Shown: piece by piece, positions 3,151-51,959 of the stretch
Layout: every line of letters starts with the position of its first letter
How positions within the stretch are numbered: position 1 is the stretch's first letter
Assembly: GCF_003918875.1 (NCBI RefSeq)
Contig: NW_025767044.1
Location: 558,001-622,000 of the forward strand
DNA from: Haliotis rubra
Lineage: Eukaryota
DNA length: 64,000 nucleotides
Reading direction: 5' to 3'
Notes under the pieces: generated by a model
Told to the model about the DNA's origin: nothing
What the model saw: the letters and a program-made list of their open reading frames with translations, nothing else
Database searches by the model: none
Translations under genes and position numbers: made by a program

Positions 3151-3189
3151 AACATGATTGGTAATAATTTTGAGGTGGTAACTTCCTTT

Positions 3190-15995: not shown

Positions 15996-16004
15996 TGTAT
16001 TAGT

Positions 16005-18563: not shown

Positions 18564-18689
18564 CCGGGAGACTACTCCCAAACTATAACGTTTACCCTAT
18601 TATCAACTGACATTTAAATGTACACATATTAAACAATCACCCAGCATAACACACTATAAATGAGTCCAACTCTTCCATTGCATCTAATT

Positions 18690-19702: not shown

Positions 19703-19872
19703 ACTGACTGACTGACTGAGTTTGGCTTTTCGCCGCTTTTAGCACTATTCCAGCAACATCACGGCGGGGGACACCAGAAATGGGCTTCACACATTGTATC
19801 CATGTGGGGATTCGAACCCGGGTCTTCGGCGTGACGAGCCAACGCTTTAACCACTAGGCTACCCAACGGCCC
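19703..19872 (-). mobile_element. tRNA-derived SINE family 1
   Basis: Full-length copy, TSD atgaaaataag (19692-19702/19873-19883). Confidence 0.92.
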
Positions 19873-22880: not shown

Positions 22881-23577
22881 GACCTGATGTCACTCTCAAA
22901 ATCAGGACGTTGAGTAACGCAAATCGCTAAAACTTCTCCCCAAGCCACGCACATCTATTGCAGCTGTGCTCAAGGAACTTTGATTAATTCGTCAATAGCA
23001 AACCATCCTATTATTGATAGGGTGCCCTATGGTGACTTGGAAACACTGTACTGGTGGTTGGAGCCGGCTCCCGATGCATAAGAATAAAAACAAGTAATGT
23101 TGTCAGAGATAATGCAGTGACATTGAAACCATATTACCTACATAGTAACTTCTTCTTACAGGATCTTGAGATAATAAGTACTCACTTTTGTGTGTTGTTG
23201 GGTTTGGGGTTTTTTAAAAAAATTATTTGGTTTATGTATAACATATTTACAATTATTGACATACAAGCATAATAAACCTTGTACACACTAATGAAAAAGA
23301 GTTATCGTTACAACTAGTTCATACAATTCACTGACGGTAAGATTACCTACTTGGAATCAATAATCAGTTCAAGGCGATTTCATTATTTTCATTTATTCAT
23401 GTTCAGTTTAATTCGTTGTTGCCTTTCGCCCTGTTGAAAAGCCCTTAAGTGAGAGGATAACTAAAACCCATATGGACATTATGCTAGATAACGACCAGAT
23501 GCCATCCTCCACGCCTCGGAACGTCTGGAACATATAGAGTCTTTCGTTTCCGAAATACTTTTAGAAATCGTTTTCTA

Positions 23578-23802
23578 CCCGGGTTAGAATTGGTCTCCAG
23601 CAACACATGTTTGTGGTAAGAGGCGACTAACAGGATCGGGGGGCCAGGCTTGCTGACTTGGTTGACACATTTCATCAGTTCCCAATTGCGTAGATAGATG
23701 CTCATGCTGTTGATTACTGGAGTATCTGGTCCAGACGCGATTATTTACAGACCGCCGCCATATTGCTGGACTATTGCTCAGTGCGGCATTAAACATAAAC
23801 CA
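23578..23802 (+). mobile_element. SINE family 2, left-arm-specific insertion
   Basis: Family-2 body ending gctggactattgctcagtgcggcattaaac; absent from the mirrored site near 51255. Confidence 0.85.
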
Positions 23803-24067
23803 AGACGCTATATATTTCCTCACAACAACATAAAAAGTTAAACCAATCAAAATTGCAATATGAAACCTGTGTAAAAGTAACTACTGTGAAACTTATATTT
23901 AACTTATGCTACACATAGTAGGGAATTACGCATTAAACAAACATTGCCATTTGACTTTGGTGATTATACTAGACTTTTATTCATAGATGCCAGACAGACT
24001 GCAAAATTCTACCGTTACGTGGGCGACAGTGTTCCTTTGATAATGCCATGATAAGTATCTACATGTA

Positions 24068-25269
24068 CAGTACAACCAGAAATTATTGAGAATTTAAAGA
24101 TTGTAATTTATTTTTTTTTTCACTCATTACTCACGTATTAAATGTGAATATTAGCAGAACATAACTCCAGATTCAAAGACAGGTGAACAGTTAGTATTTT
24201 GTCAAGTCACCATGGGCAGCAATGCAGGAGGCTTCAATTCGGCGGGGCATACTACTGATCAAAGAAGTCCCCAAACATTTTCTATTGGATTTAGGCCAGG
24301 CCTATAGCTTGGCCAATCTAATAATGTCATATTTTGGGTTCGAAACCAGGCCTGTGAATGCTTTGAACGATGTTTTGGGTCGTTGTCCTGCTAGAAAATC
24401 CAAAAATTTCCATAGAACACGTGAGCAGATTGAAGTAAATGTGCCTCAAGAATATCTGTGTACCGCTCACTGTTCATATTCCCTTCAAATACTCAGAGGG
24501 GCGTTGGCCCTAACACAGATATGCCACCCCACACGTTAAATTTCGGACTGTACTTTGGGCGCTGATACAAAGGTTTTTCAGTTTGTTTGGTCCAGAATTT
24601 CAGTGTATTAGGAAACAGCCACACAGAATTTTCATCTGAGAAAATCACATTGTCCCAGTTAAAATCTCTATGCTGTAAGCACCAGTTCAACCTTCGCTCC
24701 TTTTGTACAGGTTTCATGATCGGTGATGGAATTCCTCGACTTTTCTGCCAACCCATTGCATGCAGCTCAGTTCTAATTTTCTCCTTACAGACAGCCACAG
24801 TTCCTCTATCAAGCATATCCAACCTTAAGTTTTCTAAACTCCTTCGTTTGTTTTTAGAAACAAGAATAACAAGCCGCCTCCTGTCACCGGACAGTCAATT
24901 TTCTGGGCCTACCTGCGCCTCCCTGGTGCTCAATGCCATATCCATTTGCAATATTTTTCAAAACACGATAAACAGTGGACAAAGGGATGACTGTTCTACT
25001 TGAAATCACTTTAGGTGATCTAATGTCCTTGTTATAATACTCTAAAATCAACTTCCTCTTCTCTAAATCATCCATACTGAGGATCACTGAAAATGTCGTC
25101 TGCTAGTAAGTACACAAAGGGGGATAACTCTTCGCAAACTAATGAAAAAGGATTAACGGAGTTGCCTCTCTTGAATGAAACCAAGCACTTGATAGCTGAT
25201 CAAGGTTGTTTATACTAAAAATCCAATTAAACATATTCCTAAAATTCTCAATAATTGCTGGTCATACTA
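24068..25269 (-). mobile_element. Tc1 (DD34E) element, copy with ~100-bp internal deletion and frameshifts
   Basis: TIRs cagtacaaccagaaattattgagaattt / aaattctcaataattgctggtcatacta, TA TSD; close sister of 55182-56478; empty site in right arm at 51022. Confidence 0.95.
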
Positions 25270-27074
25270 TATCTACATATACAGCCTAACTGCGCAATAC
25301 AATTCTCCAAAAGGATGTTTTATGTACAAAACTATTATCCAAATAAAAAACAAATTGGTTTGACATTGTAACCTGAGCCTAAAATCGATGTAGGAATCCA
25401 ATCTGTTCCACCTACACATTCACGACACATGCGTGTGTCAAGTCCAGAGCTTGCCCAGAGGAAGAGTTTTGTCAAAGAGATGTATAGGGGAGACACGGCG
25501 CCGTGACCTACATGCTGAACATATGCAGTCGGTTACATGACACCGCAGCCATGTAATGAATTAGTTTCTGGGATCACCCCCAGTGGTATTGTAATGTTAT
25601 TAATGGGACAGTTGGCCGTGCGTGGGAGGGACAGTTCGGTGGGGTAGTTTACCTAAAATCAGAGTCCTTGGACCAGGTCTCAGCGGCGTGGAACATGTTC
25701 ATTATCTATACTGAGTGCGGTGCTAAAACAAGACACACAAAAACCCTTATTATGAGTGTATCGATCATATGAGATTGCATCCTGAAGAACAACTTAGTGT
25801 TCCCGAATTACTCGGGCCGAATTTATATATATTACAAAGCAGATTGTTCTAGTTATAGAACTTTATGAAGTTATGTAAGTCATCTTGTTTATCAGTTCCA
25901 CTCTACCTCTCGACAAACACATTCATCGTTTACATCTTCCAACATACATGGGGGAGTTTGAAGAATAGCTAACAAAACGAATGTTTGTTTATGCATTGAG
26001 AAAACCATAACTCGTGAAATATCTTTTCAAATATGCCAGTGTCAGGTTATTTAAAGATACAGTATCGATTCGCATGTACATATCACTCACATGCCATAAA
26101 GACTCTTGATCAACGTATATTCAACCTTTTAAACCAATTAATCACATTTGACGTCGGCGAACATGACAAATATAAATATTTCTCCTGATATTGTAACTTA
26201 AACTTTCATCGTTTGTGGGACATAAATACTATATCAGGAATTGGTTTCATCTTATTGCCAGTTAATGAAAACGATAATGCCAAATTGTCGGCGCGTTGCC
26301 AATGAAGTCTTTTGATGTTTACATTACGACCACAGACCGTCTCGCCTTATCCAGTGAACCGATTTGCTGCATGATAAACTCTCACTGTATTTCTCGCTTG
26401 TGGCACCTTAACACCTTGGTGGTCCTAAAAAGGTTTGTGTTTGTCTTGTGCGATATTTAGTCGTAAGGATTTGGCAAATGGTAACTTATTGAAAAGGAAA
26501 AAAGTAACGGTGTGTGTGCCTGTGCGTGTGTGTGTGCGTGTGCACGCAAGACAGTTAACAGAGATCTTGAGGAGAGGACAGTCCTTATGTTTTCCATACC
26601 TATATACATGTGTATAGACAAACATGCATGTCCTAGTCACACTTAACATCACAAAACATGAACATCGCGAATTATTAAATGGTGTGGACTTTTATTCCAA
26701 GTAAGCCTACGTCGCAGGTTTATCCTTAGGTTCACGGTTTATATTGACAGTTAGTTTAAACCTTACGTTCGCTCATGAAATATCACATGTGTTGTTTGTG
26801 TAGTAAAGAACCAGTTGTATTCCTTTCAGGACGCACTGTACTTTGCTGATGTGTGTGGAGGGGCGGCAACAGGGGTGGGGAAGGAAGGGACGAGATCGTG
26901 ATCAAGGTACCAGATCTTAACCCGTGCTAATGCGGCATTATGATGTGGTTTCATAAATAAATACCTAACACAAACAGATACACATTATAAACTTGAACAT
27001 AAACAGAACAGAAACAGAACAGAACTACAACGTATATAAAGAACAGGTAGTGTTTGCCCAGTTTAAGGTTTGAT

Positions 27075-27289
27075 NNNNNNNNNNNNNNNNNNNNNNNNNN
27101 NNNNNNNNNNNNNNNNNNNNNNNNNNNNNNNNNNNNNNNNNNNNNNNNNNNNNNNNNNNNNNNNNNNNNNNNNNNNNNNNNNNNNNNNNNNNNNNNNNNN
27201 NNNNNNNNNNNNNNNNNNNNNNNNNNNNNNNNNNNNNNNNNNNNNNNNNNNNNNNNNNNNNNNNNNNNNNNNNNNNNNNNNNNNNNNNN
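27075..27289. other. Assembly gap (215 N)
   Basis: Run of N. Confidence 1.
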
Positions 27290-28054
27290 CTTTAGTTATA
27301 ATCTAACACGAAAGCATCAGCTAAACAGTGAAGGACACATTAATACTGAGCTCAGTTGCATAGAGCGTTCCAGTTAGCCATTCAGGGTTTCTTCCTCAGC
27401 CGGGTTGGTATGTACTGATCATCGGTTGGAATCCCATATTCGCTCACAATTTGGTGCTTGTTCCTGACACAAAAGGAGAACGTAACACAGGCCTATTTAG
27501 ATTTCTCCCACAAAGTTGACGCGCCTTAGTGTTCCTGTCGCTGAAGTATTGTTCAGAACTGACTCAAACCACTCTCACTAACACATCATTGCTAGAAATG
27601 GCTAATATCTCAAGCACGAACATTCCTCAAATACAGGGTACATGCCATTGACACTTATTTAGTGCAATATTTGTCATTTTTGATTGAGTTTAGGCAATCA
27701 CAAATTTACAAAAATATTAGTACCACAAGATGAACCAAATGTTTGCGAAAGTCTGGACTTGGAATTTGCAAGTGTATTTGCTCATAATATGGTTCGGGTA
27801 TCAACATTAATACTGTGTGGTTTACATGGTAAAATTAAGTAGATTTCTGTCAACTCAATTTTAATAAACAAATTGGGAAAGGTAGTCAAATCACCGTATC
27901 AGGCATATTTGCTGTGTAGAATCCAGATCGCAATTGTATAGCTTGTGCGGCAACCATTACCTTTTACAAAACCTTGCAATTGCTGCACAATAACATTTAA
28001 ATCGATGTTTTCTAGCGTATATGTTATCCAGCGTATTTGCTCATTACAGTTTTG

Positions 28055-28202
28055 CTCAGTTACGTTGGTTTTTGCAATATTCAGCAATATCATGGCGGGA
28101 ACACCAGAAATGGGCTCACCTACTGTACCTATGTGGGGAATCGAACCCGGGCCTTCGGCGTGACGAGCGAACGCTTTGGACTACTAGGCTACCCCACCGC
28201 CT
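28055..28202 (-). mobile_element. tRNA-derived SINE family 1 (diverged)
   Basis: acaccagaaatgggct...ggggaatcgaacccggg...ctaggctaccccaccgc. Confidence 0.85.
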
Positions 28203-31200
28203 CTGCTCATTATAACTTTCGAATATCAACATTAATACTGTGTGGTTTACATGCATGACGAAGGTAAACTTAAACAGATTCTGTGAAGGTTTTAATAACC
28301 AAATTGGGAAAGGTAGTAAAATCACCGTATCAGGCATACTTACTGTGTAGCACCCAGATCAAATTTTCGTAGCGTGAAATGCAACATTACCTTAGTTTTA
28401 TATAACCTTGCTTCACAATAACACTTAATCGATGGTTTCCTTAAGGATATATGTAACGTAGAAAAGGCTCGTTTAAAATGACAAATGACAAATGACGTAA
28501 AGCTATTTCCAACTCTGACACTTTGAGTTCGGCAACTAAAAACAACGAACATCGTCCCACAAGTAGTAAAACACATAACATGTGACAAACTGTACACTGT
28601 ATATGCTACTGGCAGTATTCCTCGATGCCAGTACCGATGCACTGTTGACAACACTGTTGAAGAACACACACTTGACGTTCAATTAATGCATTTTATTTCA
28701 AGACCCCCAGAGGGTATTGATGGGACAGTTAGTGTGTTGTTTCCGATTTTCTCGAGTTCTTGTGGGATGGCATTTTCCCACATAGATATATTATATTTGC
28801 ATATTACTAAAAGAAGAGTGAAGTTTAAATCAAACATTTTTTTGGAGCTGGGTTTGTGTAGAAACTGTCGATTTGACGCGTGTTATCTAGCATTTAAATC
28901 GATAAAAGTTCAATCTAAAAGTCTTTCCTGATGGCAGTACATCAGTTCTTCAGGACAGGTAACCTTATGCTACATAAAATGTAACCAAAGCTCGCTGTTC
29001 ATGTGAATAGGAAACAACTTTATAAACGAACAACTTCATACTACCCTGTCGTTATCGTTGGTCATAAGCATCCTTGTCCTTTATCAAAACACCTCCTTTG
29101 TCATCGTCAATTGCAACCGCTGTGTTATGTCTATTACGTAAATGACATATGATACTTTTTAACAACAATATGTTTTCCCTTTTGTAGTCGTCACTTTATT
29201 ATCCATTTGGAACAAGAGCATTTTCAAGACACACAGATGTGTTGGCTGATTTTCTACACTTAACCATACTGTACAACGTATTACACAGAACAGTTTTATA
29301 GTGCAGTTGTATGCAACATATTGAGGATATATACTTAGTTATCACATAATAATGCTTGTTTAGTTCATAGATTTACATTGCGAAATGAGGTTTCCATTGG
29401 TTTACATAAAGTTACAATGACAACAAAACCTCCTGTAAACGGTAGAATGATGATATGGGGTACACGTGCATTACAGGTGGTATAATTCATTAACAATCTG
29501 TCTGGCTTTACAGAATATATTGTTTCATTCAATGGCAAGTCTGGTATGATAAAAAAGCATAGCGTAATAAAATAGCTTAAATCAAGGAATCTCGAAACGA
29601 TATCGGGAGGGAGGAAAAATATAGCACAATCATGACCCTGCTTACAATCTCAAACATGCAATCTCTGGAGAATTGTCATATGTTATAGGGAGGTTTTGAT
29701 TTTGATCTTCAAAAATAATGTTTGTTCGTTTGAAACCAAGCTGTTGCAAAGAATATTGTTATTCATGAAAACGATGAAACTAGAGAATGTATTTGTTGCC
29801 TAGTGGAAAGAGCATTCGGTTTCACAACGAGTTTGAATTCCCATAAAATAGAACTCATTCACTCACTCATCAGGATATGTCCATCCACAGCAAGCAAAAC
29901 CCTTTTTATTTGTTATATTCTAATATAACATACAAACATAACTTTCTGTCATTTTCAATTAGTGCTACTCGATCTGTGAGAAAAAAATGTTTCATAGCAG
30001 GACGCAGAACATTTAATTTCAGGTGCCAATACCATCTCTTGAGTCTCCTCTATGTGATGTACTCATACATGCAATGATCTGCTGTCAGCGACCTGTCACT
30101 CGGGTTGTTTCTCCAACGGAGAACTAATAGAGGAAGAGTGTTTTTCAATCGTTGGGAAATCCATAACGATGACAGTCAAGAGAAGAGGTGTCTATTTGTT
30201 TTGTATCCTTTGTTATACATCCACTGGTGGCGCTATAATTTGTTTTGTTTCCGTAAAATACCAAACAATGTTGGCCTTCTGTACTATTCCAGAGGGACAT
30301 GAATAAAGTATAATCAATCGGAAATGCGACAAGGTGAAAATGGGTTTCAGTGGGAAAAAGATAGATTGGTGTTGCTTTTGAAATCAATACTATAACTGGA
30401 CAATCAACGTGGACATTTATGAGGATATTTTTGTTGAGTATACCGACACATCTCTCCTCTTTCAGCACTGCGATCGATGAAGCTGACCAAATCGGACCTT
30501 AAAATATAATACTTTGAACAGTATGCCATTTTTATCAAATAATATGATGTGTGAGGAAAGTGAGTACGTTCCCAGCAATATTCCAGTTTTATGACGGCGG
30601 ACTGTAAATTATTGTATTTGGACCAGTGATTCATCTTAGCAAAGATCCGATCCGTCGGAATACAATCAAACGAAATAGACGCGGTCAACGAGTTTTCAGC
30701 CGGATCCATTTTGTCCACTCATACGACCAGCCGATGTGTATTGTCTGATCTAACCTGATCTGGTCAGAATGCAGTTACCGCAGTTGTAAAAGCAGTGTGA
30801 ATATATCTGCTATTTCGTAGACTGTCTCGGAGCACACGCTTTACAAGTTATCTTAGTGTGCCTGTAGCTAGCTGGATTGGACGTCAACAGCATTCGCTGA
30901 CGCCTTTGCATGTGGAAACTCTACTTGAATAGATGTTTCAACGTGGGATGGAAATTTATTGATTATTTTCAAATGCAACAATCATAACACAAGATGTCCA
31001 TCTTTACAACACACCATACAACTTAATAATTCATACATGTACACAAGTGGTAAAAGTGGACCGTGAGATGGTCCGTTGTATTTACGGTTGCCTGACCCAT
31101 TTTCAAAATGGTGTTTAGCTGTTCAAACTCGTAATAGATGAAACTCCCGAGGTCATTTCGTAATAGGTCACTAATTTAATACGAACAGCTGTACAAGTAA

Positions 31201-31920
31201 TATACTCTTCATTAAAATGAACGTGTTTTAAGAACACATCTTCACATCGTTTTATGCAATCTTTTCAAAGACAAGATATCTGAATACATTTTTATGGAAA
31301 TACCTTTCTTTTTTCCAATTTCGTTTTCCTTGCGGCCTCGTTGCCTTGCGTTGTTGAATCAATACCCTCAGCGTGGCAAACAAAGATTACTCCGAACAAG
31401 GCGCCAGGCGCCGAAAAAATAATCAACAAATTTGTGGCCGGGGAAAGTGTTAATGGAGTAATCTGCTGGACTTGCCTGTGACAAAATGGTGAGATGATAT
31501 ACAGTGATGGCCTCTGCCTGCACTAGATCATCGATGGGCGCTTTCTACATACAGGAGGGAGTTTACTTTTGCAGTTATGAAATGAAGCTGAAGAGACTTG
31601 GTCCAACCGGTCAAACAGAGATTTATATTAAATGGAATTCTTTTGCCAGTGATAATTAAAATGTAAGTTTGAATAGGCTATGTGTGAATGACCCTTTGTC
31701 ATAAATCACACATATATTATGTCTAAGCACAAAATATAATCGGGAATTATGTTGTTATTGTTTAGCTTTTCCTTTAGTATTTAAATACACTACCAGATGT
31801 AGTTTGTTGTTATACGGCAACATTACCATAGTTCAAATTTGCAACATCCATGATATGACGTTTTCCTGCCGAATATCGCAAATGATTTATAGGCGTGGTT
31901 ATGAATATAGATATGACCAT

Positions 31921-32160
31921 GAGTGAGTGAGTGAGTTAAAATTTAACGTCACACCGGCAATATTTCAGCCATATAGTGACGAGAACAAAGTTAGTATATA
32001 TGATAAATATCTGTCACGAAGGAAAGTAAAACTTTAGCAACGTATCACAGAATGCAAGTATAAAAAATTATCATTTCCAATTCTAAAAATGCAACTCGAT
32101 GTGACATATATTAACATTAAAACACGGGCTATGGACCACCAAAGATATGACCATGATTAC
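31921..32160 (-). mobile_element. Nimb/I-type LINE 3' tail
   Basis: gagtgagtgagttaaaatttaacgtcacaccggcaatatttcagccatatagtgacgag... Confidence 0.75.
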
Positions 32161-32752
32161 CCCTGCCACATAATGTCGTGTATCAGTCTTGATGCAAGCC
32201 ATGCACTTGTAGATGGAGGCAGTTAACTTCGACTTATGATCTACAAATGCAATGAGAGACAACATCCAATTACACACCCGTGAGTGCAATAAAGAGTTGC
32301 AAGGCGAAGCGTTGGACCGTGTAAATATTCCATAGCACTGCATCCATACTATAACCCGATACCATCCGCCTGCCAGGATGTATCGGATGGGAGTTACGTG
32401 TGATTTATACAGGGTTCACATCTGCTGGAGCTGTTCTCTCTTCAGTTCCTGAAGGTGTCAGCATGACACCAACCGTTTTGCCATGTCAGTTAATTAGCCA
32501 ACGTTTCCTACTCCTACCATTATGCTGTGGAGGTTGTATGCGGTAAGAACTAATTGGACATAATATACGACAACGGCAGCTGCTTCGGTAATGGCAATGA
32601 CGACGGCCATATGTAAAGTGGCTTTACAAAATAAAGGTCAGGATGGATTGATCCAAACGGGACATGACTGCCGGTAACTACAGCAGCAATGCAGTGGTGT
32701 CGTTTACTACCCTAGTCGTTCACCCACAGGTACCAGAAGTTGGTATTGCTGA

Positions 32753-32977
32753 TGAGTGTGTGAGTGAGTGTAGCTTTTCGCCACAATCAGCAATAGTCCA
32801 GCTATATGGCTTCGGTCTTTAAATGGACCAGAGAATCCAGTGATAAACATCATGGGCATCGATCTACGCAGTTGGGATACGATGACACGTTTCAACCAAG
32901 TCAGCGAGCCTGACCATCCGATCCCGTTAGTCGCCTCTTACGACAAGCTTAGGATGCTGATTATCAAGTCTAACCCG
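32753..32977 (-). mobile_element. SINE family 2, left-arm-specific
   Basis: Reverse complement of family-2 body with (actc)n tail; absent from mirrored site ~42810-42850. Confidence 0.8.
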
Positions 32978-34149
32978 TTTTTTCGGGTTATTGCTGATGA
33001 ACATACAGTAGATAAGTACGAACAACACTCGAACAGAAAAGACAATATATTGTGTATGTTAAATTGAGTTTACACATTCAACACCGACTACAGTCGAACC
33101 CAAGAGTAAGCTTACCCTAAGGTTTTGAAAATATCTGAGAAAAGTCGTGGCGGAAAAAACTATATATTTGTACATAGACATGTTATACCAACGTATACCT
33201 AAATACCAGCTATCCCTGTCCATCAAGCACAAAAATGTGTTGTTTGTCCTAGCCTACAACGAGTCATTCTTCGATGTTGCATTATAGCTCAATATATACA
33301 ATATATTGCAATGTAAAATGGATGCATACAGAATATCAAAACACGTTTCTGCAGTAATGATATATTTCCATATGAAGGACTTTGGACATTGTCATATATT
33401 TCACGTTTCTTTGATAGAAAGAAAGCTAAATTATTACTTATGTTGAAAAAGTCGGATTTGGAGAATCAGAAACTAATATCCACAGATAGGCTTGTCTCAT
33501 ATATATAGCTATCAGCAAATATAAACTGGCCAGAAGACTGTGATGTATTGCTTGCAGTTTGATTTACGTGGTAATTCTCAATTTTATCGCTATTTTTCAA
33601 GTAGTGTGCTCGATATGTGTAAGATTTATTGGATCTGAAGATGAAATAACTTTTTGCATCTGGATTTCTCATAGAAAAGCCCATTACGATGAAGGCCTGG
33701 TTGTTTGTTTTTAAGATGATTTACTTATTAGTAATAGACAGACACAATACATGCTTTTGGAAAGAGGCTGGATTCCAAGTTACGTCAACAACTTTGTGGT
33801 GATATGGTTTGACTGGCTGTAATAACATTTCTTGCTATTATAGGATCAGTTGAAGCATATCCAATGACAAATGTACTAGTCTTCCGCTCTGTTGCGCTGT
33901 ACAGCACTTGACACCTATTGACTTAAGCCGTGTGAATATGTATATACCGGACGCGTCAGCAGTTTTCATAATAAACCAAAGGTGAGGATATACCACATAA
34001 ACGTCAAGAAATCACTCAATATGAAAATATTGACGGAAAGCCGTGTGATGAAAGCGGAATGTGTTTAATAATAAGTCGTCTTCTATAGCGCACAGTCTCC
34101 AAACACCAAGTGTTTGCTCTCGGCGCTTAATCAGAATATGATTCTTATT

Positions 34150-34300
34150 ACCCCGGATAACCCAAGCTGCCTGTTAGGCGCTAGAAGGTTATAGTCACAT
34201 GACTTTATCCAACCGGGTACCCATTTTCTGCTGGGTGAACAGAGGCAACTTTGAACAAACTCACTTGCTTAAGGTGAGACCACATGTATCACATGTGCTT
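34150..34300 (-). mobile_element. SINE fragment of a third family (conserved central domain)
   Basis: gggtacccattttctgctgggtgaacagaggc...cacttgcttaagg; reverse complement resembles the cacccagc..aaatgggtacc core of invertebrate central-domain SINEs. Confidence 0.5.
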
Positions 34301-34326
34301 CGGAAACATGAAATTTATTCTGTTTA

Positions 34327-34572
34327 AGTGAGTGAGTTAAGATTTTACGTCACCTCGGCAATGTTTCAGCCATATAGTGACGAGAAATGTTTTACATAAA
34401 CAATAAATTTAAGTTGCTAAATAATCAGTCAACGAAGGACTGTAAAATAACTAGAGTATCACAGATGGAGTCTAAAACTAGCATGAACATGTAAAACTAT
34501 TTTATTTACGAAGACAATACAATATAAAAACGGGCTATAGGTCGCCAACAACTGAAGGTAGATCACCACACT
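34327..34572 (-). mobile_element. Nimb/I-type LINE 3' tail
   Basis: Close match to 54742-55005. Confidence 0.75.
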
Positions 34573-37277: not shown

Positions 37278-37335
37278 AGCCGCCATATAGCTGGAATATT
37301 GCTGAGTGCGGCGTAAAACTAAACTCACTCACTCA
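37278..37335 (+). mobile_element. 5'-truncated SINE tail with TSD
   Basis: gccgccatatagctggaatattgctgagtgcggcgtaaaactaaactcactcactc, TSD ctgataacattc (37266-37277/37336-37347). Confidence 0.85.
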
Positions 37336-37348
37336 CTGATAACATTCC

Positions 37349-37460
37349 TGTAACTAGATTTACGAAGCTCTCTTAGAGCTAATATAGTCGTAAATGTCAT
37401 ACATTAACATTAACGTACGACTATCTTAGCTCTAAGAGAGCTTAAAAAATCTAGGCCCTG
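37349..37460. mobile_element. Short hairpin MITE
   Basis: ctagatttacgaagctctcttagagctaatatagtcgta ... tacgactatcttagctctaagagagctt....aatctag: near-perfect ~40-bp inverted arms; absent from mirrored arm. Confidence 0.75.
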
Positions 37461-40400: not shown

Positions 40401-43375
40401 AGTTTGAATTATATGTTCTATAGCGTTTGGTGACGTAGATGGTTCAATTAGTTGGACGCCTCACGTCTTCGGGTATTGAGTGTGTGTGATTTTCGCACTA
40501 TATTTTTTTTTTTTACTATGACGAAGAAGAGTTGCCTTTTGAAATTAGAAGAAACAGAATGCAGTTACTGCTCATTGTTTTGATCGCTACTAGTAGCAAA
40601 TTGATGGGGCGGATCGGTGAAAATCACTTTTCACCGTGATATTTGTCATAATGCATTCCACAAAGGAATACATACTGAAAGCAAAAGTAGATTATCCTCC
40701 TTTTAGAAAGTGTGTTCTACTGATTTGGAACAATCCAATTACATCAAGCGAATATTAGCCTCTTGATATTGTACAAAACTTCATACTTTACGAATTTTAC
40801 ATTTTATTCAATACTGTCATTCCACTGTAAATGTCGCAGCTAATAGCTGCAAAATTGCTTACGTGGCGTTGGACAATACTCACTCACTTTGATATGTTAC
40901 ACTGATAGCATTCTTTCTGGTGGATGTCAAACACGGGATAATCTGGTCTAAATTAGTTTGTCTATAGGTAGCCCCATAATATTGCTGCCGTTAAACAAAA
41001 TAAAGCCATGCAAGATATTCGGTTTTCACCACATAACTCTCCGTCAATATTTTCATACTGAGTGATGGCTTGAGTTTATGTGATGTATCCTTACCTTTGC
41101 TTTATTATGAAAACTCCTGGCGTGTCCAGTATATACATATTTACACAACTAATGCCAATATGTATCAAGTGCTATACTGTGCACATGAGCGAAATACAAG
41201 ACCATTTGAGATAGGATATGCTTCAGCTGATCCTATCACTGCAAGACATGTTATTACCGCCAGTCGAGCCATATCATCACAAAGTTGTGGACGTAGCTTT
41301 GAATCCAGCCTATTTACAAATGCATGTATTGAACCGGGCACTTACCAATAAGTACTGTAACATTATCCTAAAGACAACAAACCAGGCCTTCATGGAAAAC
41401 TCTTTCATCTTCAGATTCAACCAATCGTGCACATAGCGAGCACACTACTTGAAAAATGGCGATAAAATTGAGAATTACCACGTAAATCAAACTGCAAGCA
41501 ATACATCACAGTCTTCTGAACAGTTTATATTTGCTGATAGCTATATATATGAGACAAGCCTATCTGTGGATATTAGTTTCTGATTCGCCAAATACGAATT
41601 TTTTCAACATAAGTAATAATTTTGCTTTCTTTCTATCAAAGTCCTTCAAATGGAAATATATCATTACTGCAGAAATGTTTTATTGATATTCTGTATACAT
41701 CCATTTTACATTGCAGTACATATTGGATACATTGAGCTATCATCGAAATATGACTTATGTATGCTTGGGTTCAGCAACACAGTGTTAGCCTAGATGGACG
41801 AGGATCTGCTGATACTTGGTTCGATTCCCCCCAGTCTGACAGGGATAATGGTCCTTTGGTTACCATTGCGAGACCGGTGCTCGTTGATTTCAATTGTAAA
41901 CGTATACGGCCTGACATTGGCATTCCTCTTTCAACACGCAGAGGAATGACTGAAATATAATAATAATTATTATTCAAGCCCCTCCAGATTCGTGTATCTT
42001 ACATCTTAATACGATTTTATTTGACATACGACATTCACAGAACCCCAACACTCACTGGTGTATTGAAGAAGCTATTGAGGGGACAGGATGTGTGTCTGAT
42101 TGGGATTAACGAGTAAGGTTAGAACGTACAAGATATGAGAGTTCATCATCAGAAAAAAGCCTAAAGTCGTATCTGCATTGCTTCAGCACTATAGCTTCTG
42201 GCAGTAACAGAAGCACGCAAAACATGACATGCAGCCAGTTGTAGCCCTTAAAACCTTTCGAAATCTAGCGGAAGAAAAACAAATACAAATAACCTCCAAG
42301 GGCGTTAATGGACCTCCCAGTGTTGTGTTTCGATTTTTTGTAAAATTCTGAGGACAAAATTCTAAACAATGTTTAAAGAATTCTCTCACCACGCGACAAC
42401 TATCAACATTGGTACAAATATCTACGTACAAGTGTATTCATAGTTTTACTCTCGACACGGTATTGCTGGAATGTTTCCAAAAACACACTCAGGAAGCTTA
42501 CTCCTTTTGGTTCGCCTGTAGTTGGTGTTGAAACTCTGAACGAATGAATGTTTACAAGTTGCAATACTCAAACCTAAACATTGAATCCCGATGAAGGAGC
42601 ATGCATATGCTCCTAAACGTCGTGTTATTCACACCAAAAAAAGAGAAGTTTAGTTAACATCCATAAATCTTGCTTTTCTGACACAAGTCCAAAACCTTAG
42701 GATAAGCCTACTCTTTGGGGTTCGCCTGTACTCGGTGTTGAAACTCAATTTAAGTACACTATAAATTGTCTTTTCTGTTCGGCTGTTCGTACCTTTCTAC
42801 CGTATGTTCATCAGCAATACCAACATATAGTGGGTGAAAAACTTTGGAACTAAACAACGCGACTGCATTGCTGATGTAGTTACCGGCGTCGTACCGTCAT
42901 GTCCAGTGTGGATCAATCCATCGCGACCTTTAAATTCTAAAGCCACTTTACATATCGCCTTCATTGCCGTCATCGTACATTGTGTAGAGTTAGTATTGAT
43001 CACATGCAACCTCTACAGCCTAATGGTAGGAGTAAGAAACGTTGGCTAATTAACTGACATGGCATGACGGCTGGTGTCATGCTGACACCTTGAAGAACTG
43101 AAGGGACAACAGCTCAAGTAGATGGGAAGCCGGTATGAATCACTCGCAACTCGCTTCCGATACATCCTGATAGGCGGATGGAATCAGGTTACAGTATGGA
43201 TGCAGTACTTTGAAATAATTGCATACAGTCCAATGCTTGACCTTGCAAGTCTTTATTGCATTCATGAGAGTGTACGTTGACGTTGTTGAAATTAACTGCC
43301 TCTATCTACAAGTTCAAGTTTGCATTGAGAATAACTATGCTGATGACTATATTGATATGTTTTATGGCATGGGTA

Positions 43376-43547
43376 ACTGACCTGACTGACTGAGTTTGGT
43401 TTAACGCCGCTTTTAGCAATATTCCAGCAACATCACGGCGGGGGACACCAGAAATGGGTTTCACACATTGTACCCATGTGGGGAATCGAACCCGGGTCTT
43501 CGGCGTGACGAGCGAACGCTTTAACCACTAGGCCACCCCACCGCCCC
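43376..43547 (-). mobile_element. tRNA-derived SINE family 1, right-arm-specific
   Basis: Full-length copy, TSD ggcatgggta (43366-43375/43548-43557). Confidence 0.92.
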
Positions 43548-46114
43548 GGCATGGGTAGCCAAGGTCAAAAATATCTTCATTACTACGACAATCATCTAAA
43601 ATGTGGGCTATGCTTATGACAAACAAATTACAACTGTTAGTGAATCAAAATGCTGAAGGAAACGCAAAACTAGAGAATAATATAAGCCCCGAATATATTT
43701 GTGGCTAGACATTATACATGTGCGTTTTATGACTAAGGGTAATAAATTCATAAACCTTTCAACTTTAATTATCACTGACAAGACAATTCCATTTATTATA
43801 AATCTCTGTTTGACCAGTTGTTCCATAACTACAAAGGTAAACTGTCCTGCGGGTGGCAAGTGCCTTTCAATGATCTAGTGCAGGCAGAGGGCATCATACT
43901 ATCATCTCACCATTATGTCCCAGGCAAGTCCAGCAGATTACTACATTAACAGTTACTCTTTCCCTGGCCAAATTTGATGATTATTTGTTCTGCGTCGAAA
44001 CGGTGCCGGCGCTTTGTTTAGAGTAATCGTTGTTGGCCACGCTGTGAGTATTGAGTCAACAACATGTGGCAACGAGGCAACAAGGAAAATGAAATTGGAC
44101 AGAGAAAGGTTTTTCCACAAGAAAGAGTTCAGATATCCTGTCTTTAAAATAGAAGCGACAAAACCCTTTCCAGATTCATAATAAATCTCGATTGTACAAT
44201 TGTGAATATATCATGAGCAGATATTTGTTTCAGCAGTATTACAGTTGTTTTAAACAAATCCAGTCTGATCCAGACAATCCAGTGATTGTCACCATGCCAT
44301 ACGATGACAGAGCATGTGTTTATGAATCACTATGAAATAGTGATGATACCAGGTGTTCGCGAAAAGGTGAGCGTATCCTGCCTCGTCTGGTCATTTGATC
44401 ACCTAAAATAATTCGGGAACGCATAGTATAAGTCAAAATAGGGACTTGCATCGGACATCATTTTTGTCACTGATGCATCAAATTCTGAAATTTCCTCCAC
44501 ATGTCTACAATAAAACTTCTTGAAAACTTTACTGAAGCCTTTTATGTACCTTGTTCAAACAACTTCTCAGCAAGAAGAGTATATGACTTATACATCTATT
44601 CGTATTACATCAGTGAATATTACAACAGTTAACTCCATTTTGAATATAGGTTAAGCAACAATAAGTATAACGAATCATTTACTCAAATTTGATGTCAGGA
44701 ATGCTTGCTGAAAAGGGATTCTGCTGGTAACATGTGTACACCTGTATGCAATTTTGTTGTTAAAACTATAGTGAGTGTGTCGTAACATGGACAGATTCAT
44801 TTGAAAATAATTATCAATTTCCGCTCCATGTTGAAATACCTTTCCAGTAGAATTTCCACAGGCAGACAGTCAGGGTCTCAGCAATGATGTTGACGCCCGA
44901 ATGAGGAAAGTGCACACTAAGATACCTTCTAAAGAATTCACTCTGTGGGAGGCTACGGAACATGAAACTCGCCGCAACAGCATATATTTACATTTCTTTA
45001 AAAAATGTGGTAACTTCGCTGTCATACGATCAGGGTATATCAGACAATACACGTCGACTGGCGACACAATTGATCGGATTGATTGGTGACCCGATGATTG
45101 TGTATCACTGTACTTTGACGGATTGAATCTTTGCTCATAAGATGAACTACTGATCCAGATTCGATTCTTAACAGACCGCCGTCATAAATCCGGATTATAG
45201 CTGGGAATGTACTCGCCTTCATCACACATCACGCTTTGATAAAACTCACATACTGTTCAAAGTATTATATTTTAAGGTCCACTTTTGTCAGCTTCGTCGA
45301 TTGCAGTGCCCCATGGAGAGAGTTGAAAGTCCAATTATAGCTTTCATTTCAAAAGCAACACCAGTCCATCTTTTCCCATTGAAACACTTTTTCACCTTGT
45401 CTCAATTCCAATAGATTATGTTTTATTCATGCCCCTCTAGAATAGTATAGAAGGCCAACACTGTTTGGTAGTTTACGGGAAAAAATGAAAGTGCCACCAG
45501 TGTGCGTAAACGTGAATGTAATCCTTTTCGGATGCAAACAAATAGACACGTGTTCTTTTGACTGTCAGCATTATGGATTTCTCAACGAATGAAAAACACA
45601 CTTCAATTATCTTTATTAGTTCTCTGTTGGAGAAACATCCCAAGTAAAAAGTCGCTGACAGATCGACGCATGGGTGCATCTCATAGAGGCGACTTCAAGA
45701 GATGGCATTGGCACCTGATATTAAATGTTCTGCGTCCTGCTGTAAAACATGTTTTTCTCACAGATGCACTGGCAATAATTGGAAATAACAGAAAATTATT
45801 TTTGGAATATTTGTTAGAATATAAAGACTAAATAGGTTTTGCTTGCTGTGGATGGACACACCTGATGAATAAGCGAGTTATATTTTGAGGAATTCAAAGT
45901 ATGAAGAACGCTCTTTCCATGTATAAGACAATCAAATATATTTTCTAGTTTTCTCGTTTCATGACATAACGATATTCTTTGAAACAGTTTGGTTTCAAAC
46001 GAACAAACAATAGAGATTGTATAAATTTGTGTCATTACTGAGCTGTATTTACCATCTTTCTCGACATCGCTTCGAGACTAGTTCTCTGTTTGCCCTCGAT
46101 CTTCCATATTGCGT

Positions 46115-46252
46115 TTGGCTCGTCGTCACGCCGAAGACCCGGGTACGAGTCCCCACATGGGCACAATGTGTGAAGCCCATTTCTGGTGTCCCCCGCCGTG
46201 ATGTTGCTGGAATATTGCTAAAATCGGCGTAAAACCAAACTCAGTCAGTCAG
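46115..46252 (+). mobile_element. 5'-truncated SINE family 1
   Basis: TSD tccatattgcgt (46103-46114/46253-46264). Confidence 0.9.
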
Positions 46253-48386
46253 TCCATATTGCGTATATGGTAGTACACTTTGCTTTTGGATCATGTCAGA
46301 CTCGCCATCGAATAAGGCCGGTGGACTTATGTGCCAATCACCTCCCGAACCTGTATATTATTTAAAGCAATAAAGATTGCCAAAAACGTATACCACCTAT
46401 ACTGTACTTGTACCACACATCATCATGTTTACAAGACGTTTTGTTGTCATTATAACTAAATGTTTACCAAATATGTATTTCGCAATGTAAATCTATTAAC
46501 TAAATAGGCATTATTATGTGATAGGAAAGTGTATATCCGCAATATGTTGCATATAATTTCACTGTAAAATTGTTCTGTGTAATGCGTTGTGCAGTATGGT
46601 TAAGTGTCGAAAATGCTCTTGTTCCAAACGTTTCCAAAGAGTTTTCATTTTATCCTGAACACCATCATTCCAAATAAGGTTGGATATTACATTATCCTTG
46701 AATATATTGCTCAACAACCACAAAGACTTTGAAATTAGGAACAGATTTCATTTTGGTGAGGACACAGCATGAACCCGCACTATGATCTAGAGATTTTGTA
46801 GTGCTTTATTGTTAAATGAGCTATTTAGTATTTTCAAAAGTTTCCCTTATCCCGAGTGCATCAGAATATAATATTTGCTGGATTACAGAGTATCCCACTG
46901 GGTTACCTCTATACGATCTTCGTTTAAAAGTCATTACATCACATTTCATGAAAAGGTAATTATCAAACCTTTCAGTTAACAACCAAACAATTACAAGGGT
47001 CACAATATTCTTCAACCTGTTCTCAGTGAGGGCAAGCTCCTCTAGAACCGTCTGAAAGTGTAAATAGCCTACTGAGGTGGATTGGAAAGATAACTCCTGA
47101 TTGAGCATGTCACTAATGACATAAACGGTTGCATGCACATTGGTTTAGGAGATTCGGTTTTATCAAAGCCCAACGCTGCTAGCCAGATTATATGAGCGAG
47201 CAAACTAGTAAATGTTCCTACGTTAAAAAGAATCATTTCTCCTCTACGTTGTTGACATAACGCAGTGGTTGCAACTGGCAATGATAAGAATTGTGTTTTG
47301 ACAAAGGACAACCATGATTGTGACCAACGTTAACAACAAGGTGGTACGAAGTTTATCTTGTTGGCAATTTTCACATGAAGTGTCATCCTTTGGTAAATGT
47401 ATGTAACATATAGTTTCTTGTCGTGGAGACATTATCTACTCCCATCTAGAACGAACTATAAATAGCAGTAGTCATATGGACAGGGTTTCTTTTGCAAACA
47501 AACTTAGCTCTAAAATGTTTCATTTCAACTTCGCACTGCGTTTAGTAATGCGCAAGTGATATCAAAGTTATTAACTCAAATATGTTGCTTCACCCAATGT
47601 ATCCATGTGGGAGAATGCAATCCCGCAAGAACTCGAGAAACTCGGAAGTAACACGCTAGCTGTCCCATCAATACCCTCGGAGGGTCTTGAAATAATTATT
47701 ATTTCTATCGTTTAAATTGAACGTCGAGACCAGGAGTATGTGTATGTGCTTCCGGTATTGTCAACACTACATCGGAATTGGCGTCGAGGAATACTGCCAT
47801 CAGCAGATATAGTATACAGTGTGTCACATGTTATGTGTTTTTACTACTTGTGAGACGACTGTTATTGTTTTTAGTTGCTGAATTCTTATTGAAACTGTCA
47901 GAGTTGGAAAAAGCTTTAAGTCATTTGTCATTTTGAAAATGAGCCCGTTCAATGTTACACATATCCTTAAGGGAACCAATCGATTTCAATGTTATTGTGC
48001 AGCGAGGTTTTGTAAAAGGTAATATTTGCAATACAATTTCGATCTGCGTTCTGCGCAATCAATGTTTGTTTTGTTTTAAATTGAGTTGACACAGAATCTG
48101 TTAAATTTTACCATCCACATACATGTAAACCACACAGTATTAATGATGATACTCGAACCTTATAAAGAGCAAATTCACTTCCAAATACTAAGTCGCGACT
48201 TTCGGAGCCATTTCATGTATCTTGTGTTACTAATATTTTTCCAAATGTGTAACTGCCTAAAATCAATTTAATATGACAAATATCGCACTACATATATGTC
48301 ATGTACCCTGTATTTGAGAAAATTACATGCTTGAGATATTAGCCATTGGAGGCAATAATGCATTGGTTTGAGTCAGTTCTGAACAA

Positions 48387-48744
48387 TAGGGCCCGTAACA
48401 CGCGAGGCGCTACTTCCGGTAATAGATTTCCGGTGACATACATTCAAGAACCAGTTCTGGTTCCAAATTGCGCAACTGCAAAATATGACTTTACTAGACT
48501 GGACCAAGTGCACTACCACGTTTGGCTGCGCAGCTGTTAACAGATATACACGTGCTATTCATGCAACATAGTTTAAGTGTTTGTTGTAACCTGTTGCATG
48601 TCATAGTTTTATGAGTCAGACAACATGTATGATTAGCTAGGACATGCCCCTTGTAACAGTGCTATCGCCATTGCCATAAAACGCCATTTGTCACCGGAAA
48701 TACTTAAGTCTTTGCAAAGTGTCGTGACCTACTTACGGGCCCTA
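48387..48744. mobile_element. MITE with TAGGGCCCGTAA terminal inverted repeats, right-arm-specific
   Basis: tagggcccgtaa...ttacgggcccta; inner inverted atttccggtgaca/tgtcaccggaaat; empty site in left arm ~27545. Confidence 0.8.
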
Positions 48745-49075
48745 TATTCCAGCTACATGAACACTGTGGCGCGTCTGGGAGGAATCTCCAAAACCAGTCT
48801 TACATCTTCCCTTTGTGACAACAACGAGCACCACATTGTGACAAATAACGTCAAGGGGAATATAGGATTACAACCGATGCTCAGCGAATATGTTTTTCAA
48901 AGTTTAGATGGCATATTTTAACTACATGTTATGATGCTGGGTCGACATGGGTTACATTAAAACTGGATGTTAACATATGGCAACGTATCAGTTCAGTCAG
49001 TCACATATAATTTGGCATCAAATATTAAACTGGGCATGCAGTGTACATTACCCGTACTTTTATTACTTTTTGTTC

Positions 49076-49076
<1 letters not shown>

Positions 49077-49126
<50 letters not shown>
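49077..49126. repeat. (GTT)n microsatellite
   Basis: ~16 perfect GTT units. Confidence 0.98.
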
Positions 49127-49127
<1 letters not shown>

Positions 49128-49825
49128 AGGGGTTTGTTAAGTATATGCTCAAGATTATGGTGTACATGCTTTTATTAGATATTTTCTCATTTTGAAACCT
49201 CATAATAAAACCGAATTTGCGCAGGTTAACATCACATCCCAGCCTTACCAACCACCATCCTCACCCAGTATCCTCGTGAACTCTATGAACTGTCTTGCAC
49301 AAGCGCACACACGCACATACACACACCGTTACTAGTTTCTTTCTCAATAGTTTACCGATGGACAAATCCTTACGACTAAATACCACACAGGACAAACACA
49401 AGCCACATAATGATCTCCGAGTTGTAAAGGTGCCCCAAGCGAGAAATATACTGAGTGTTTATTATGCAGCAAATCGGTTCCTTTGATTGGGCTAGACGGT
49501 CTGTGGTCGTAATGTAACATCAAAATACTTCATTGAAAAATTGCCGACAATTTATCATGATCGTTTTCGTTTAACTAGCCATAAGATCAAGCCAATTCCT
49601 GATATGGTATTTACGTCTCACAAACGTTGATAGTTTTCGTTACAATATCAGGAGAAAAATTATATTTCTCATGTTCGTGCATAGTTGCAAAGACCATTCA
49701 CGAATTATGGTGTTCCGATGCATAAAAAAGGATTCGTGATACTGGCTATTCTTCAAACTCCTCCATTGTGATGACTGATAAAAACAATGAATGTGTGTGT
49801 AAAAGGATGGAGTAGAACTGATATG

Positions 49826-50389
49826 CAACAACATCCTCATATTGCCACAACTACATAAAGGTCTACGTTGTAACAACCCGTACATGTACGATATGCCAAT
49901 TCTGCCCAACACCATCCTCATATCCCACAACTACATAAAGGTCTACGTTGTAACAACCCGCACATGTACGATATGCCAATTCTGTCCAACAACATCCTCA
50001 TATGCCACAACTACATAAAGGTCTACGTTGTAACAACCCGCACATGTACGATATGCCAATTCTGTCCAACAACATCCTCATATGCCACATTTACATAAAG
50101 GTCTACGTTGTAACAACCCGCACATGTACGATATGCCAATTCTGTCCAACAACATCCTCATATGCCACAACTACATAAAGGTCTACGTTTTAACAACCCG
50201 CACATGTACGATATGCCAATTCTGTCCAACAACATCCTCATATGCCACAACTACATAAAGTCTACGTTGTAACAACCCGTACATGTACGATATGCCAATT
50301 CTGTCCAACAACATCCTCATATGCCACAACTACATAAAGGTCTACGTTGTAACAACCCGCACATGTACGATATGCCAATTCTGTCCAAA
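49826..50389. repeat. Minisatellite, 80-bp unit, 7 copies
   Basis: tctgtccaac recurs at 49981, 50061, 50141, 50221; no spacers. Confidence 0.95.
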
Positions 50390-51959
50390 CTTATCCTGAA
50401 CTTTGTGCTTTACTTTATGAAACAAACTCCCACTATCAATACATTCATCATATAGATGTTCTCGTCTTGCTTAGCACACCGCTCAGTGTAGATCATGACA
50501 ATGTTCCAAACCGTTAAGACCTGGTCCAAGGAACTTAAATTCTAGGTCAGTGGATCATAATGACAAAGGGACGAATCACAGCGAATTGTTTCCCGTAGGA
50601 GACGTATCATATGATCTGATTAAGGATAACTGCCCCCGGACCCCACCTAACTGCCCCTCCCACGCACGGTTGCCTGGGGAAACAGTCCCATTAAAAAAAT
50701 CACAATGCCACTGGGGTAATCATAGAAACTAATCATTACATGGCTGTGGTGTCATGTAACCGACTGCATATGTTCAGCATGTAGGTCACGGTGCCATGTC
50801 TCCCCGATACATCTCTTTGACAGAACTCTTCCTCTGGGCAAGCTCTGGACTTGACACACGCATGTGTCGTGAATGTGTAGGTGGAAAAGATTGGATTCCT
50901 ACATCGATTTCAGGCTCAAGTTACAATGTCAAACCAAGTTTTTCTTATTTAGATAATAATCTTGTAGATATAAACGTCCATGTGGGAGAAGCGTTGTGCG
51001 CAGTTAGGCTGTATATGTAGATACATGTAGATACTTATCATGGCATTATCAAGGGAACACTGTCGCCTACGTAACGGTATAATGTTGCAGTCTGTCTGGC
51101 ATCTATGAATAAAAGTTTAGTATATTCATCAAATGCCCGCAATGCCAAATGGAAATGTCTATTTAATCCGTAATTCCCTACTATACGTAGCAAATGTTAA
51201 AGTTTCCAAGTAGTTATTTTTATTTAATTTAATTTCCATGTTGTAGTGGGAAAGTAGAAAACGATTTCTTAAAGTGTTTCTGTAACAAAAGACTCTATAT
51301 GGTACAGACATTTCGAGGCGTGGAGGATGGTATCTGGTCGTTATCTAGTATAATCTCATCAATATATTTTAGGGAATTTCACGCGATTTTCAATGCATGT
51401 TTGATACAATATTAGTCGTATTATTATAACATAATTATAATATTATGTAAATACATGTGCTATGGGATATGTATCTATATTGTGCTTTACCTCTAAAGTC
51501 TTTACATAGTCTATATTCTTACGCTTTTACTAAAATCCCTTTCGATAGAAATAGACGTTTCATTCATACTCATCGTAGCTAATGCTCATTCATTCCCCTA
51601 AAGAGATTGTGATAGTTAATTAAGTGTAGACATTGTGCTGAACAGTAGTGTCTGCAAGATATATTACATCTCATTATGTTTCATTTCATAGCTATCCTTT
51701 GAGGCAATATGACGAAACAAATTACGATCTGAGGAACTTGTCCAGACATATTAAATGAACATTCTTGAGTTATGAGACATTGGACAGCATCTGTTACGAG
51801 GTATCATTTGATACTCTTTATTTTGGATTCAAATTACTCCCTTCAAGACAGAAGCTTCGTGCACTGATCCTATGCTCTTGAACTAGGAATGTAGTTGACC
51901 TTAAGTACCACTAACAATCACGATGACATACAAAATGCAAATTTTCAAAAACCTTTAGG

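What the first reader, a model, noticed from the sequence alone, without database searches (positions are those of the whole stretch)
23478..51354. Hidden ~28 kb fold-back palindrome with a tiny spacer
Seen: two ~14 kb arms are reverse complements from the outer boundary (23478/51354) to the centre. tggcatctgg at 37806 pairs with ccagatgcca ending 38061, and weak pairing continues to ~37905/37975, leaving a spacer of only ~70-135 bp. The arms are old (roughly 70-85% identity by eye) and each has private insertions (left: Tc1, SINE2 x2, Nimb tails, hairpin MITE; right: SINE1 x2, MITE, 80-bp array), so this is not an assembly mirror artefact. Established: long near-spacerless palindromes arise by fold-back repair, are normally unstable, and transcribed inverted repeats give hairpin RNA. 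Inference: read-through transcription would yield a multi-kb imperfect hairpin of the unidentified family found at 1-16 kb, making this a candidate hairpin-RNA/endo-siRNA or piRNA source locus that silences or archives that family.
Basis: partly seen in the sequence, partly recalled or inferred. Interest (0 to 1): 0.85.

Follow-up and report, generated by a model that had tools for sequence, protein, structure and literature searches.

The report
Old non-coding inverted duplication in abalone
A 13-kb stretch of apparently non-coding abalone DNA was long ago copied and pasted back-to-front right beside itself, and the two copies have since swapped pieces during DNA repair; it is a real, readable fossil of genome rearrangement, but nothing found here suggests it works as an RNA-silencing locus.

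Summary
The palindrome is real. Arms 23475-37864 and 38006-51357 are collinear, 81% identical over 8.7 kb, with many private insertions. Single contigs from four samples (three organism labels) cross the centre.

New here: 70 bp of the centre (37935-38004) reappears inverted just outside the left arm (23386-23464). The left copy is therefore a circular permutation of 37935-51357, the signature of one local copy-paste event (fold-back synthesis with a template switch, or re-insertion of a DNA circle). The arms later exchanged DNA: a ~310-bp right-to-left templated insertion (absent in a related organism) and two 96%-identical tracts. Both arms are the youngest members of an older local tandem cluster (1.6-20 kb).

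No gene, structured RNA or G:U bias was shown. Arm 21-mers barely match the older copies, and published work finds no endo-siRNA pathway in molluscs. No RNA run was available, so transcription is untested. The scan noted the insertion separately and similar large inverted duplications elsewhere in this genome (unchecked). Verdict: an ordinary, probably neutral inverted segmental duplication with an unusually legible origin.

The parts
23475..37864 (-). Left arm: inverted, inferred derived copy of 38006-51357
38006..51357 (+). Right arm: inferred resident copy, same orientation as the older tandem units
23386..23464 (-). Inverted copy of centre piece 37935-38004, joined to the outer end of the left arm (end-to-start junction; circular permutation)
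   Evidence: best of 1146 windows; 0/2000 dinucleotide shuffles
37865..37934 (.). Unmirrored spacer piece; resembles 14813-14868 of an older unit
37935..38005 (+). Centre piece not mirrored at the centre but mirrored at 23386-23464
36085..36420 (-). Templated insertion: first ~22 bp left-type, rest right-type (83 informative columns), short homology at the return point; absent in organism C, apparently present in B
36421..36762 (-). Resident left-arm copy of the same segment, 84% identical to the right arm
38946..39265 (+). Donor of the templated insertion (96% to 36085-36420)
25310..25630 (.). High-identity tract (up to 96%) with 50655-50983; likely older conversion tract
   Evidence: above permutation threshold
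33259..33708 (.). High-identity tract (up to 96.5%) with 41374-41758; conversion or constraint (also among the best-kept blocks in the older copies)
24066..25271 (-). Left-only Tc1 transposon with TA duplication; 95.7% to the copy at 55180-56481
37277..37456 (.). Left-only SINE tail plus hairpin MITE-like piece, high copy in the genome, absent in organism C
49826..50388 (+). Right-only 80-bp tandem array, 7 copies
27075..27289 (.). Assembly gap inside the left arm; left untouched
1579..20425 (+). Three older, decayed direct copies of the same unit (about 1.6-3.1, 4.5-14.8, 14.8-20.4 kb), 67-79% to the arms in surviving blocks
498..1085 (-). Older inverted piece of the same unit (matches 34930-35455 on + and 39800-40369 on -)
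41165..41272 (-). Unproven 35-codon signal-peptide-like ORF; left-arm counterpart 33804-33911(+) has a stop at codon 3
   Evidence: not significant as best hit; no homologue

Best explanation
A decaying, probably neutral inverted segmental duplication inside an older local tandem cluster of non-coding units. Shown: the structure is X, rc(t), rc(R), s, t, R, Y, where t = 37935-38005, R = 38006-51357 and s = 37865-37934. Inferred origin: one copy-and-paste event at a break or stalled fork near 37900. Either the broken 3' end folded back, primed at ~38005, copied ~13.3 kb, switched to the single-stranded loop (t) and rejoined X; or a circle of t+R opened at ~38005 and re-inserted inverted beside its source. 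Both give the same sequence. Afterwards the arms diverged to ~81% and took up transposons independently, which should make hairpin or cruciform formation progressively harder (inferred). They occasionally served as repair templates for each other: one right-to-left templated insertion (shown, polarised with organism C) and two homogenised tracts (inferred conversion).
For: Collinear arms with indels throughout and private insertions. Permuted junction piece significant, its end within 2 bp of the left arm's inner end. Left flank and spacer both match one + strand stretch of an older unit, so the left arm looks like the insert. Arms are closer to each other than to the older units. Insertion absent in organism C while its donor region is present. 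Tracts exceed the permutation maximum. No ORF excess, coding-type substitution pattern, conserved exon, Rfam family or conserved RNA fold. Organism C differs by about 8% across the centre and lacks coverage over much of 39.4-41.4 kb. Literature: fold-back with spacer and local templated inserts (PMC3907307); local n-jumps (PMC7025897); permuted order from circles (PMC7450558); arm-to-arm conversion (PMC6790999).
Against: The permuted piece is only ~75 bp, AT-rich and ~75% identical, so its ends are fuzzy by several bases. No species lacking the duplication was seen. Neutrality is argued from absence of signal and no RNA data were available. A weak signal-peptide-like ORF and a 77-nt AG...GT-bounded segment recur in the paralogues. 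The two 96% tracts could reflect selection.
Confidence: 0.7

Rival explanations
1. The units are (mostly dead) copies of a small multi-exon orphan gene or lncRNA. The arms would be a convergent paralogue pair transcribed towards the centre, and the conserved blocks would be promoter and exons kept by selection.
For: An ATG at the same aligned place in four copies opens a hydrophobic, signal-peptide-like frame. Arm-to-arm changes in it are 9 synonymous to 10 non-synonymous codons by my hand count, against a background fraction of 0.18. The strongest conserved donor of the arms lies 75 nt past its stop, and a TATA-like run lies upstream in the best-kept block. Another agent's unchecked note describes small orphan gene arrays in this genome (s1-320400).
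Against: It is not significant as a best hit (top null score reached in 18.5% of shuffles). The frame is broken in three of four copies. No homologue was found (the two phmmer hits are repeat artefacts). No second exon was found.
Confidence: 0.13
2. Two-step origin: direct tandem duplication of t+R, then inversion of the first copy with a staggered break that duplicated t. Otherwise neutral, as in the best explanation.
For: The region has a history of direct tandem duplication and at least one older inversion. An end-to-start junction is also what a tandem duplication makes.
Against: It needs a break at the same position (~38005) in both copies. The duplicated t is no younger than the arms (~75% vs 81%), so the steps would be near-simultaneous. 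No significant third copy of t lies at the left arm's inner end.
Confidence: 0.08
3. One reading: read-through transcription gives a long hairpin that yields endo-siRNAs, or the locus is a piRNA cluster, silencing the related copies at 1-20 kb.
For: The geometry allows a fold-back RNA: 27 perfect duplex runs of 21 bp or more (807 bp), about 50 runs when G:U is allowed. The central 480 nt fold at -174 kcal/mol. Molluscs make abundant piRNAs (PMC12479628).
Against: No G:U strand bias; 0-1 perfect 21-mer matches to the supposed targets; the innermost arm parts are among the least similar. No target gene or transposon was identified. No endo-siRNA pathway is reported in Mollusca (PMC11114477, PMC12479628). 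No RNA holder was found (uninformative).
Confidence: 0.06
4. A giant foldback transposon whose arms are terminal inverted repeats.
For: Sharp outer boundaries and inverted arms.
Against: No target-site duplication at the outer ends. The arms have low-copy depth in all four runs, there is no transposase between them, and they are paralogues of local tandem units.
Confidence: 0.02
5. Assembly artefact (mirrored read or inverted haplotig).
For: One assembly gap lies in the left arm.
Against: 19% arm divergence, far above the 2-5% between samples; private insertions; centre crossed by independent contigs in four runs.
Confidence: 0.01

Closest known systems
Fold-back inverted duplications (Hermetz et al. 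2014, PMC3907307) and local n-jumps (PCAWG, PMC7025897)
   Same: Inverted copy next to its source, single-copy spacer, short piece templated from beside a breakpoint at a junction.
   Different: Interstitial, with no terminal deletion visible; spacer ~140 bp against 766-70,466 bp in the human series; fixed in a germline long enough to reach ~20% divergence; priming microhomology can no longer be read.
Segmental duplications via circular DNA intermediates (Chicote et al. 2020, PMC7450558)
   Same: Derivative copy has the donor's two ends joined inside it (A-B becomes B-A), with no long homology at the junction.
   Different: Inserted within ~70 bp of its own start and inverted, making a palindrome (nearest published pair 90 kb apart); one block is only 70 bp, so a template switch explains it equally well.
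Mammalian sex-chromosome palindromes with arm-to-arm gene conversion (PMC6790999)
   Same: Long arms, short spacer, arm-to-arm sequence transfer including copy-number change.
   Different: Arms 81% identical rather than kept near-identical; conversion rare and patchy; no genes shown; chromosome type unknown.
Drosophila hairpin-RNA (hpRNA) loci (PMC10317233)
   Same: Local inverted repeat of sequence related to nearby paralogues.
   Different: hpRNAs are defined by a primary transcript and Dcr-2-dependent 21-22 nt siRNAs, with examples fully complementary to targets; none shown here, target matches are poor, and molluscs lack DICER2.

Membership tests
Inverted segmental duplication / palindrome | Two long collinear reverse-complement arms of low-copy DNA around a short spacer | tested here: met
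Inverted segmental duplication / palindrome | Centre junction present in independent DNA | tested here: met
   contigs of X1, X5, X4, X8 cross it
Palindrome with arm-to-arm conversion | Tracts transferred between arms after their divergence | tested here: met
   polarised insertion; two tracts, cause inferred
Palindrome with arm-to-arm conversion | Arms kept near-identical overall | tested here: not met
   81% identity
Circle-mediated duplication | Donor ends joined inside the derivative (permuted block order) | tested here: met
   one block is only 70 bp
Circle-mediated duplication | Ancestral empty acceptor site in an outgroup | not testable with these tools
   all three organisms laid carry the centre junction
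Fold-back inverted duplication | Inverted microhomology at the spacer edge | tested here: inconclusive
   no significant pairing inside 37866-38005; sequence too decayed
hpRNA / endo-siRNA locus | Inverted repeat able to form long duplex RNA | tested here: met
   (27 perfect runs of 21 bp or more)
hpRNA / endo-siRNA locus | Primary transcript across the centre | not testable with these tools
   no RNA run holds the stretch
hpRNA / endo-siRNA locus | Dicer-2-dependent 21-22 nt siRNAs | not testable with these tools
   no small-RNA data; DICER2/siAGO reported lost in Mollusca (PMC11114477)
hpRNA / endo-siRNA locus | High complementarity to a target family | tested here: not met
   0-1 exact, 10-15 with up to 1, about 50 with up to 2 mismatches per arm
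hpRNA / endo-siRNA locus | Strand-biased G:U-compatible mismatches (expected under selection on an RNA duplex; own knowledge) | tested here: not met
   334 vs 351, p=0.54
piRNA cluster | Dense 1U-biased 24-32 nt reads, ping-pong or phasing | not testable with these tools
   no small-RNA run available
Foldback (FB/Galileo-type) transposon | Target-site duplication and dispersed copies of the termini | tested here: not met
Protein-coding paralogue pair | Conserved spliced reading frame or homologue | tested here: inconclusive

The most novel reading that the evidence does not exclude
Abalone genomes may repeatedly build large, nearly spacerless palindromes by re-inserting an excised or loop-templated copy right beside its source, and keep them for long periods as mutual repair templates. 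The several 8-41 kb inverted duplications noted elsewhere in this genome would then share the permuted-junction signature, and some, perhaps this one, might double as piRNA sources or as convergent pairs of tiny secreted-peptide genes.
Probability: 0.12. Interest if true: 0.6.

Novelty: new member of a known kind. Interest (0 to 1): 0.3.

Why it matters
As it stands it is a clean natural record of how an interstitial palindrome was born (permuted junction), survived with a ~140-bp loop in an animal germline, and exchanged DNA between 80%-identical arms. That is useful as an invertebrate example and as a template for a genome-wide test of origin mechanisms, but each element is known from human, cancer or yeast work. 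It would matter much more if small RNAs or a spliced peptide gene were shown, because molluscs are thought to lack the hairpin-RNA pathway.

Tried and rejected
Coding search found nothing: tblastx between arms, synonymous-fraction scans, ORF counts against Markov nulls (44 vs 39.7 and 32 vs 29.7), conserved splice-pair search, Pfam, homologue searches, phmmer (both hits are long repeat proteins with summed weak scores) and the Atlas. Structured RNA: Rfam finds only a tRNA-like SINE head outside the arms, and the best block has a consensus fold of -8 kcal/mol with no covariation. Inverted triplication (ODIRA) was rejected because no same-age direct third copy lies left of 23475. Foldback transposon was rejected (no TSD, low copy). 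The sigma-70 scan does not apply to this organism and was uninformative. The gap was not filled or looked up. The single read-laying run used 5,951 letters.
Full report
Observation. A self-comparison of the window shows a chain of reverse-complement matches from 23475/51357 inward to 37864/38006. The arms are about 14.4 and 13.4 kb; 8,731 columns align at 81.3% identity, K2P distance 0.22. Each arm has insertions with a clean empty site in the other, for example a 1,204-bp Tc1 with a TA duplication in the left arm and an 80-bp array in the right. There is no target-site duplication at the outer ends.

Is it real DNA? Laying public contigs on 35850-41800 shows the centre crossed by one contig in the best holder X1 (37422-39002), in a second sample X5 (37869-38102), in organism B (one contig carrying the listed differences from 37785 to 38694) and in organism C (37716-39352, 137 differences in about 1.6 kb). 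X1 may be the assembly's own sample; the others are independent. The junction is therefore older than the split from organism C, in keeping with arm divergence about 2.5 times the window-to-C distance (inference, assuming similar rates). Depth over the inner arms is low-copy apart from known repeats. The N gap at 27075-27289 was left alone. Its flanks are collinear with the ungapped right arm, but no read across it was examined, so linkage of the outer 3.6 kb of the left arm rests on the assembly and on this collinearity. The host is a mollusc by the neighbouring beta-xylosidase exon at 62555 and blacklip abalone according to other agents' notes (species not checked by me).

Context. Blocks of the arms recur at 1.6-20.4 kb as three older, decayed direct copies in the orientation of the right arm, plus an older inverted piece at 0.5-1.1 kb. 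The arms are 82-87% identical to each other in these blocks and 67-79% to the older copies. The palindrome is thus the latest duplication in a local cluster.

How it arose. A sensitive search found that 23386-23464, immediately outside the left arm, is the reverse complement of 37935-38004, the part of the centre just before the right arm. It is the best of 1,146 windows scanned and beats 2,000 of 2,000 dinucleotide shuffles. It ends at 38004, and the left arm's inner end pairs to 38006. Read on the minus strand, the left copy is therefore 38006-51357 followed by 37935-38004: a circular permutation of the donor opened at about 38005. The layout is X, rc(t), rc(R), s, t, R, Y. The left flank (23233-23320) and the spacer (37877-37934) both match one + strand stretch of an older unit, 14813-14913 (0 of 500 shuffles each, among 14 comparisons tried). 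This fits the left arm being the insert, though the exact ancestral order of these short pieces is unresolved.

Two known routes give this product, and the sequence cannot separate them. One is fold-back priming at a break, long synthesis and a final switch onto the single-stranded loop; fold-back duplications keep a spacer and carry local templated inserts (PMC3907307), and such clusters are the local n-jumps of cancer genomes (PMC7025897). The other is a circle that re-inserts with permuted block order (PMC7450558). A tandem duplication followed by a staggered-break inversion is possible but needs a coincidence of break positions. The caveat is that the permuted piece is short, AT-rich and about 75% identical.

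What the arms did afterwards. The left arm holds two tandem copies of a 336-bp segment. The first (36085-36420) is 96% identical to the right arm (38946-39265); its first 190 right-type bases differ only by a 4-bp indel. The second is 84% identical and the flanks 75-77%. The first copy starts with about 22 left-type bases, then follows the right arm at 83 informative columns, and returns at a short shared motif. Organism C's left arm runs straight from 36068 to 36422 without it, while C has the right-arm donor region; organism B appears to have both junctions, one of them bridged by only 30 letters. This is a right-to-left templated insertion after the split from C. I found it; the scan had also noted it (s1-352147). 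Two further tracts, 25310-25630 with 50655-50983 and 33259-33708 with 41374-41758, reach 96% over 200 columns, above the permutation maximum of about 0.93. Conversion is the simplest reading, but the second tract is also among the best-kept blocks in the older copies, so constraint is not excluded. Arm-to-arm conversion is established for Y palindromes (PMC6790999); here it is too rare to hold the arms together.

Function. I found no gene. ORF counts match Markov nulls; substitution patterns, splice-pair searches and database searches are negative; Rfam and consensus folding give nothing. The one hint is a 35-codon, signal-peptide-like frame at 41165-41272(-), whose ATG aligns in four copies, with a strong donor 75 nt past its stop. 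It is broken in three copies, ranks second in a scan whose top score is reached by 18.5% of shuffles, and has no homologue (such short queries are weak tests).

The hairpin-RNA idea. A read-through transcript could form duplexes: 27 perfect runs of 21 bp or more, 807 bp in all. But mismatches show no G:U bias for either strand (334 vs 351, p=0.54). Identity does not rise towards the centre. Only 0-1 arm 21-mers match the older copies exactly, and about 50 of some 14,000 match with up to two mismatches. Drosophila hpRNAs are defined by a transcript and Dcr-2-dependent siRNAs (PMC10317233), whereas molluscs are reported to have lost DICER2 and siAGO and to show no dedicated endo-siRNA pathway (PMC11114477; PMC12479628). 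No RNA run holds the stretch, which says nothing about silence; a piRNA role is untested.

Verdict. A real, old, most likely neutral inverted segmental duplication, made in one local copy-paste event and lightly edited by arm-to-arm repair. Other readers in the scan noted several 8-41 kb inverted duplications and non-coding tandem duplications in this genome (unchecked), which suggests that it is not exceptional here. New member of a known kind; interest 0.3.

Noticed in passing
window 35850-41800, run X5: Sample S3 is labelled as the same organism as the best holder, yet it differs from the window by 1.5-3.7% and shares most listed differences with organism B; possibly a hybrid, a mislabel or a deeply diverged haplotype.
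   Followed up: no
36108-36298 vs 39075-39265: The first ~190 bp of the templated insertion have no substitution against the donor, although organisms A and B differ by 3-5% nearby; possibly a second, later homogenisation.
   Followed up: no
27779-28012 and 28204-28439: A second left-arm tandem duplication with a SINE between the copies; both copies are 82-83% to the right arm, so it is old and not recently templated. Similar short old duplications lie in the right arm (42406-42541 / 42673-42819; 39540-39667 / 39740-39870).
   Followed up: partly
33905-33981(+), 41095-41171(-), and paralogues near 1.55 kb and 10.6 kb: An AG...GT-bounded segment of 77, 77, 77 and 68 nt (hand count) in four copies; could be a relic exon.
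   Followed up: partly
55180-56481: Tc1/mariner copy with long transposase ORFs (DDE_3), 95.7% identical to the copy inside the left arm; other decayed Tc1-like ORFs at 8253-8822 and 16697-17362.
   Followed up: partly
57420-61699(-): Decayed LINE with endonuclease, RT-like and ORF1-like frames.
   Followed up: partly
62555-62863(+): First coding exon of a secreted GH3 beta-xylosidase-like gene; the whole duplication cluster lies upstream of it.
   Followed up: partly
13524-14176: 56-bp minisatellite, 11.7 copies, inside the second old unit.
   Followed up: no
20616-20643 and 21119-21146: Short inverted repeat pair (26 of 28 bp) about 500 bp apart, probably the ends of a small DNA transposon.
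   Followed up: no
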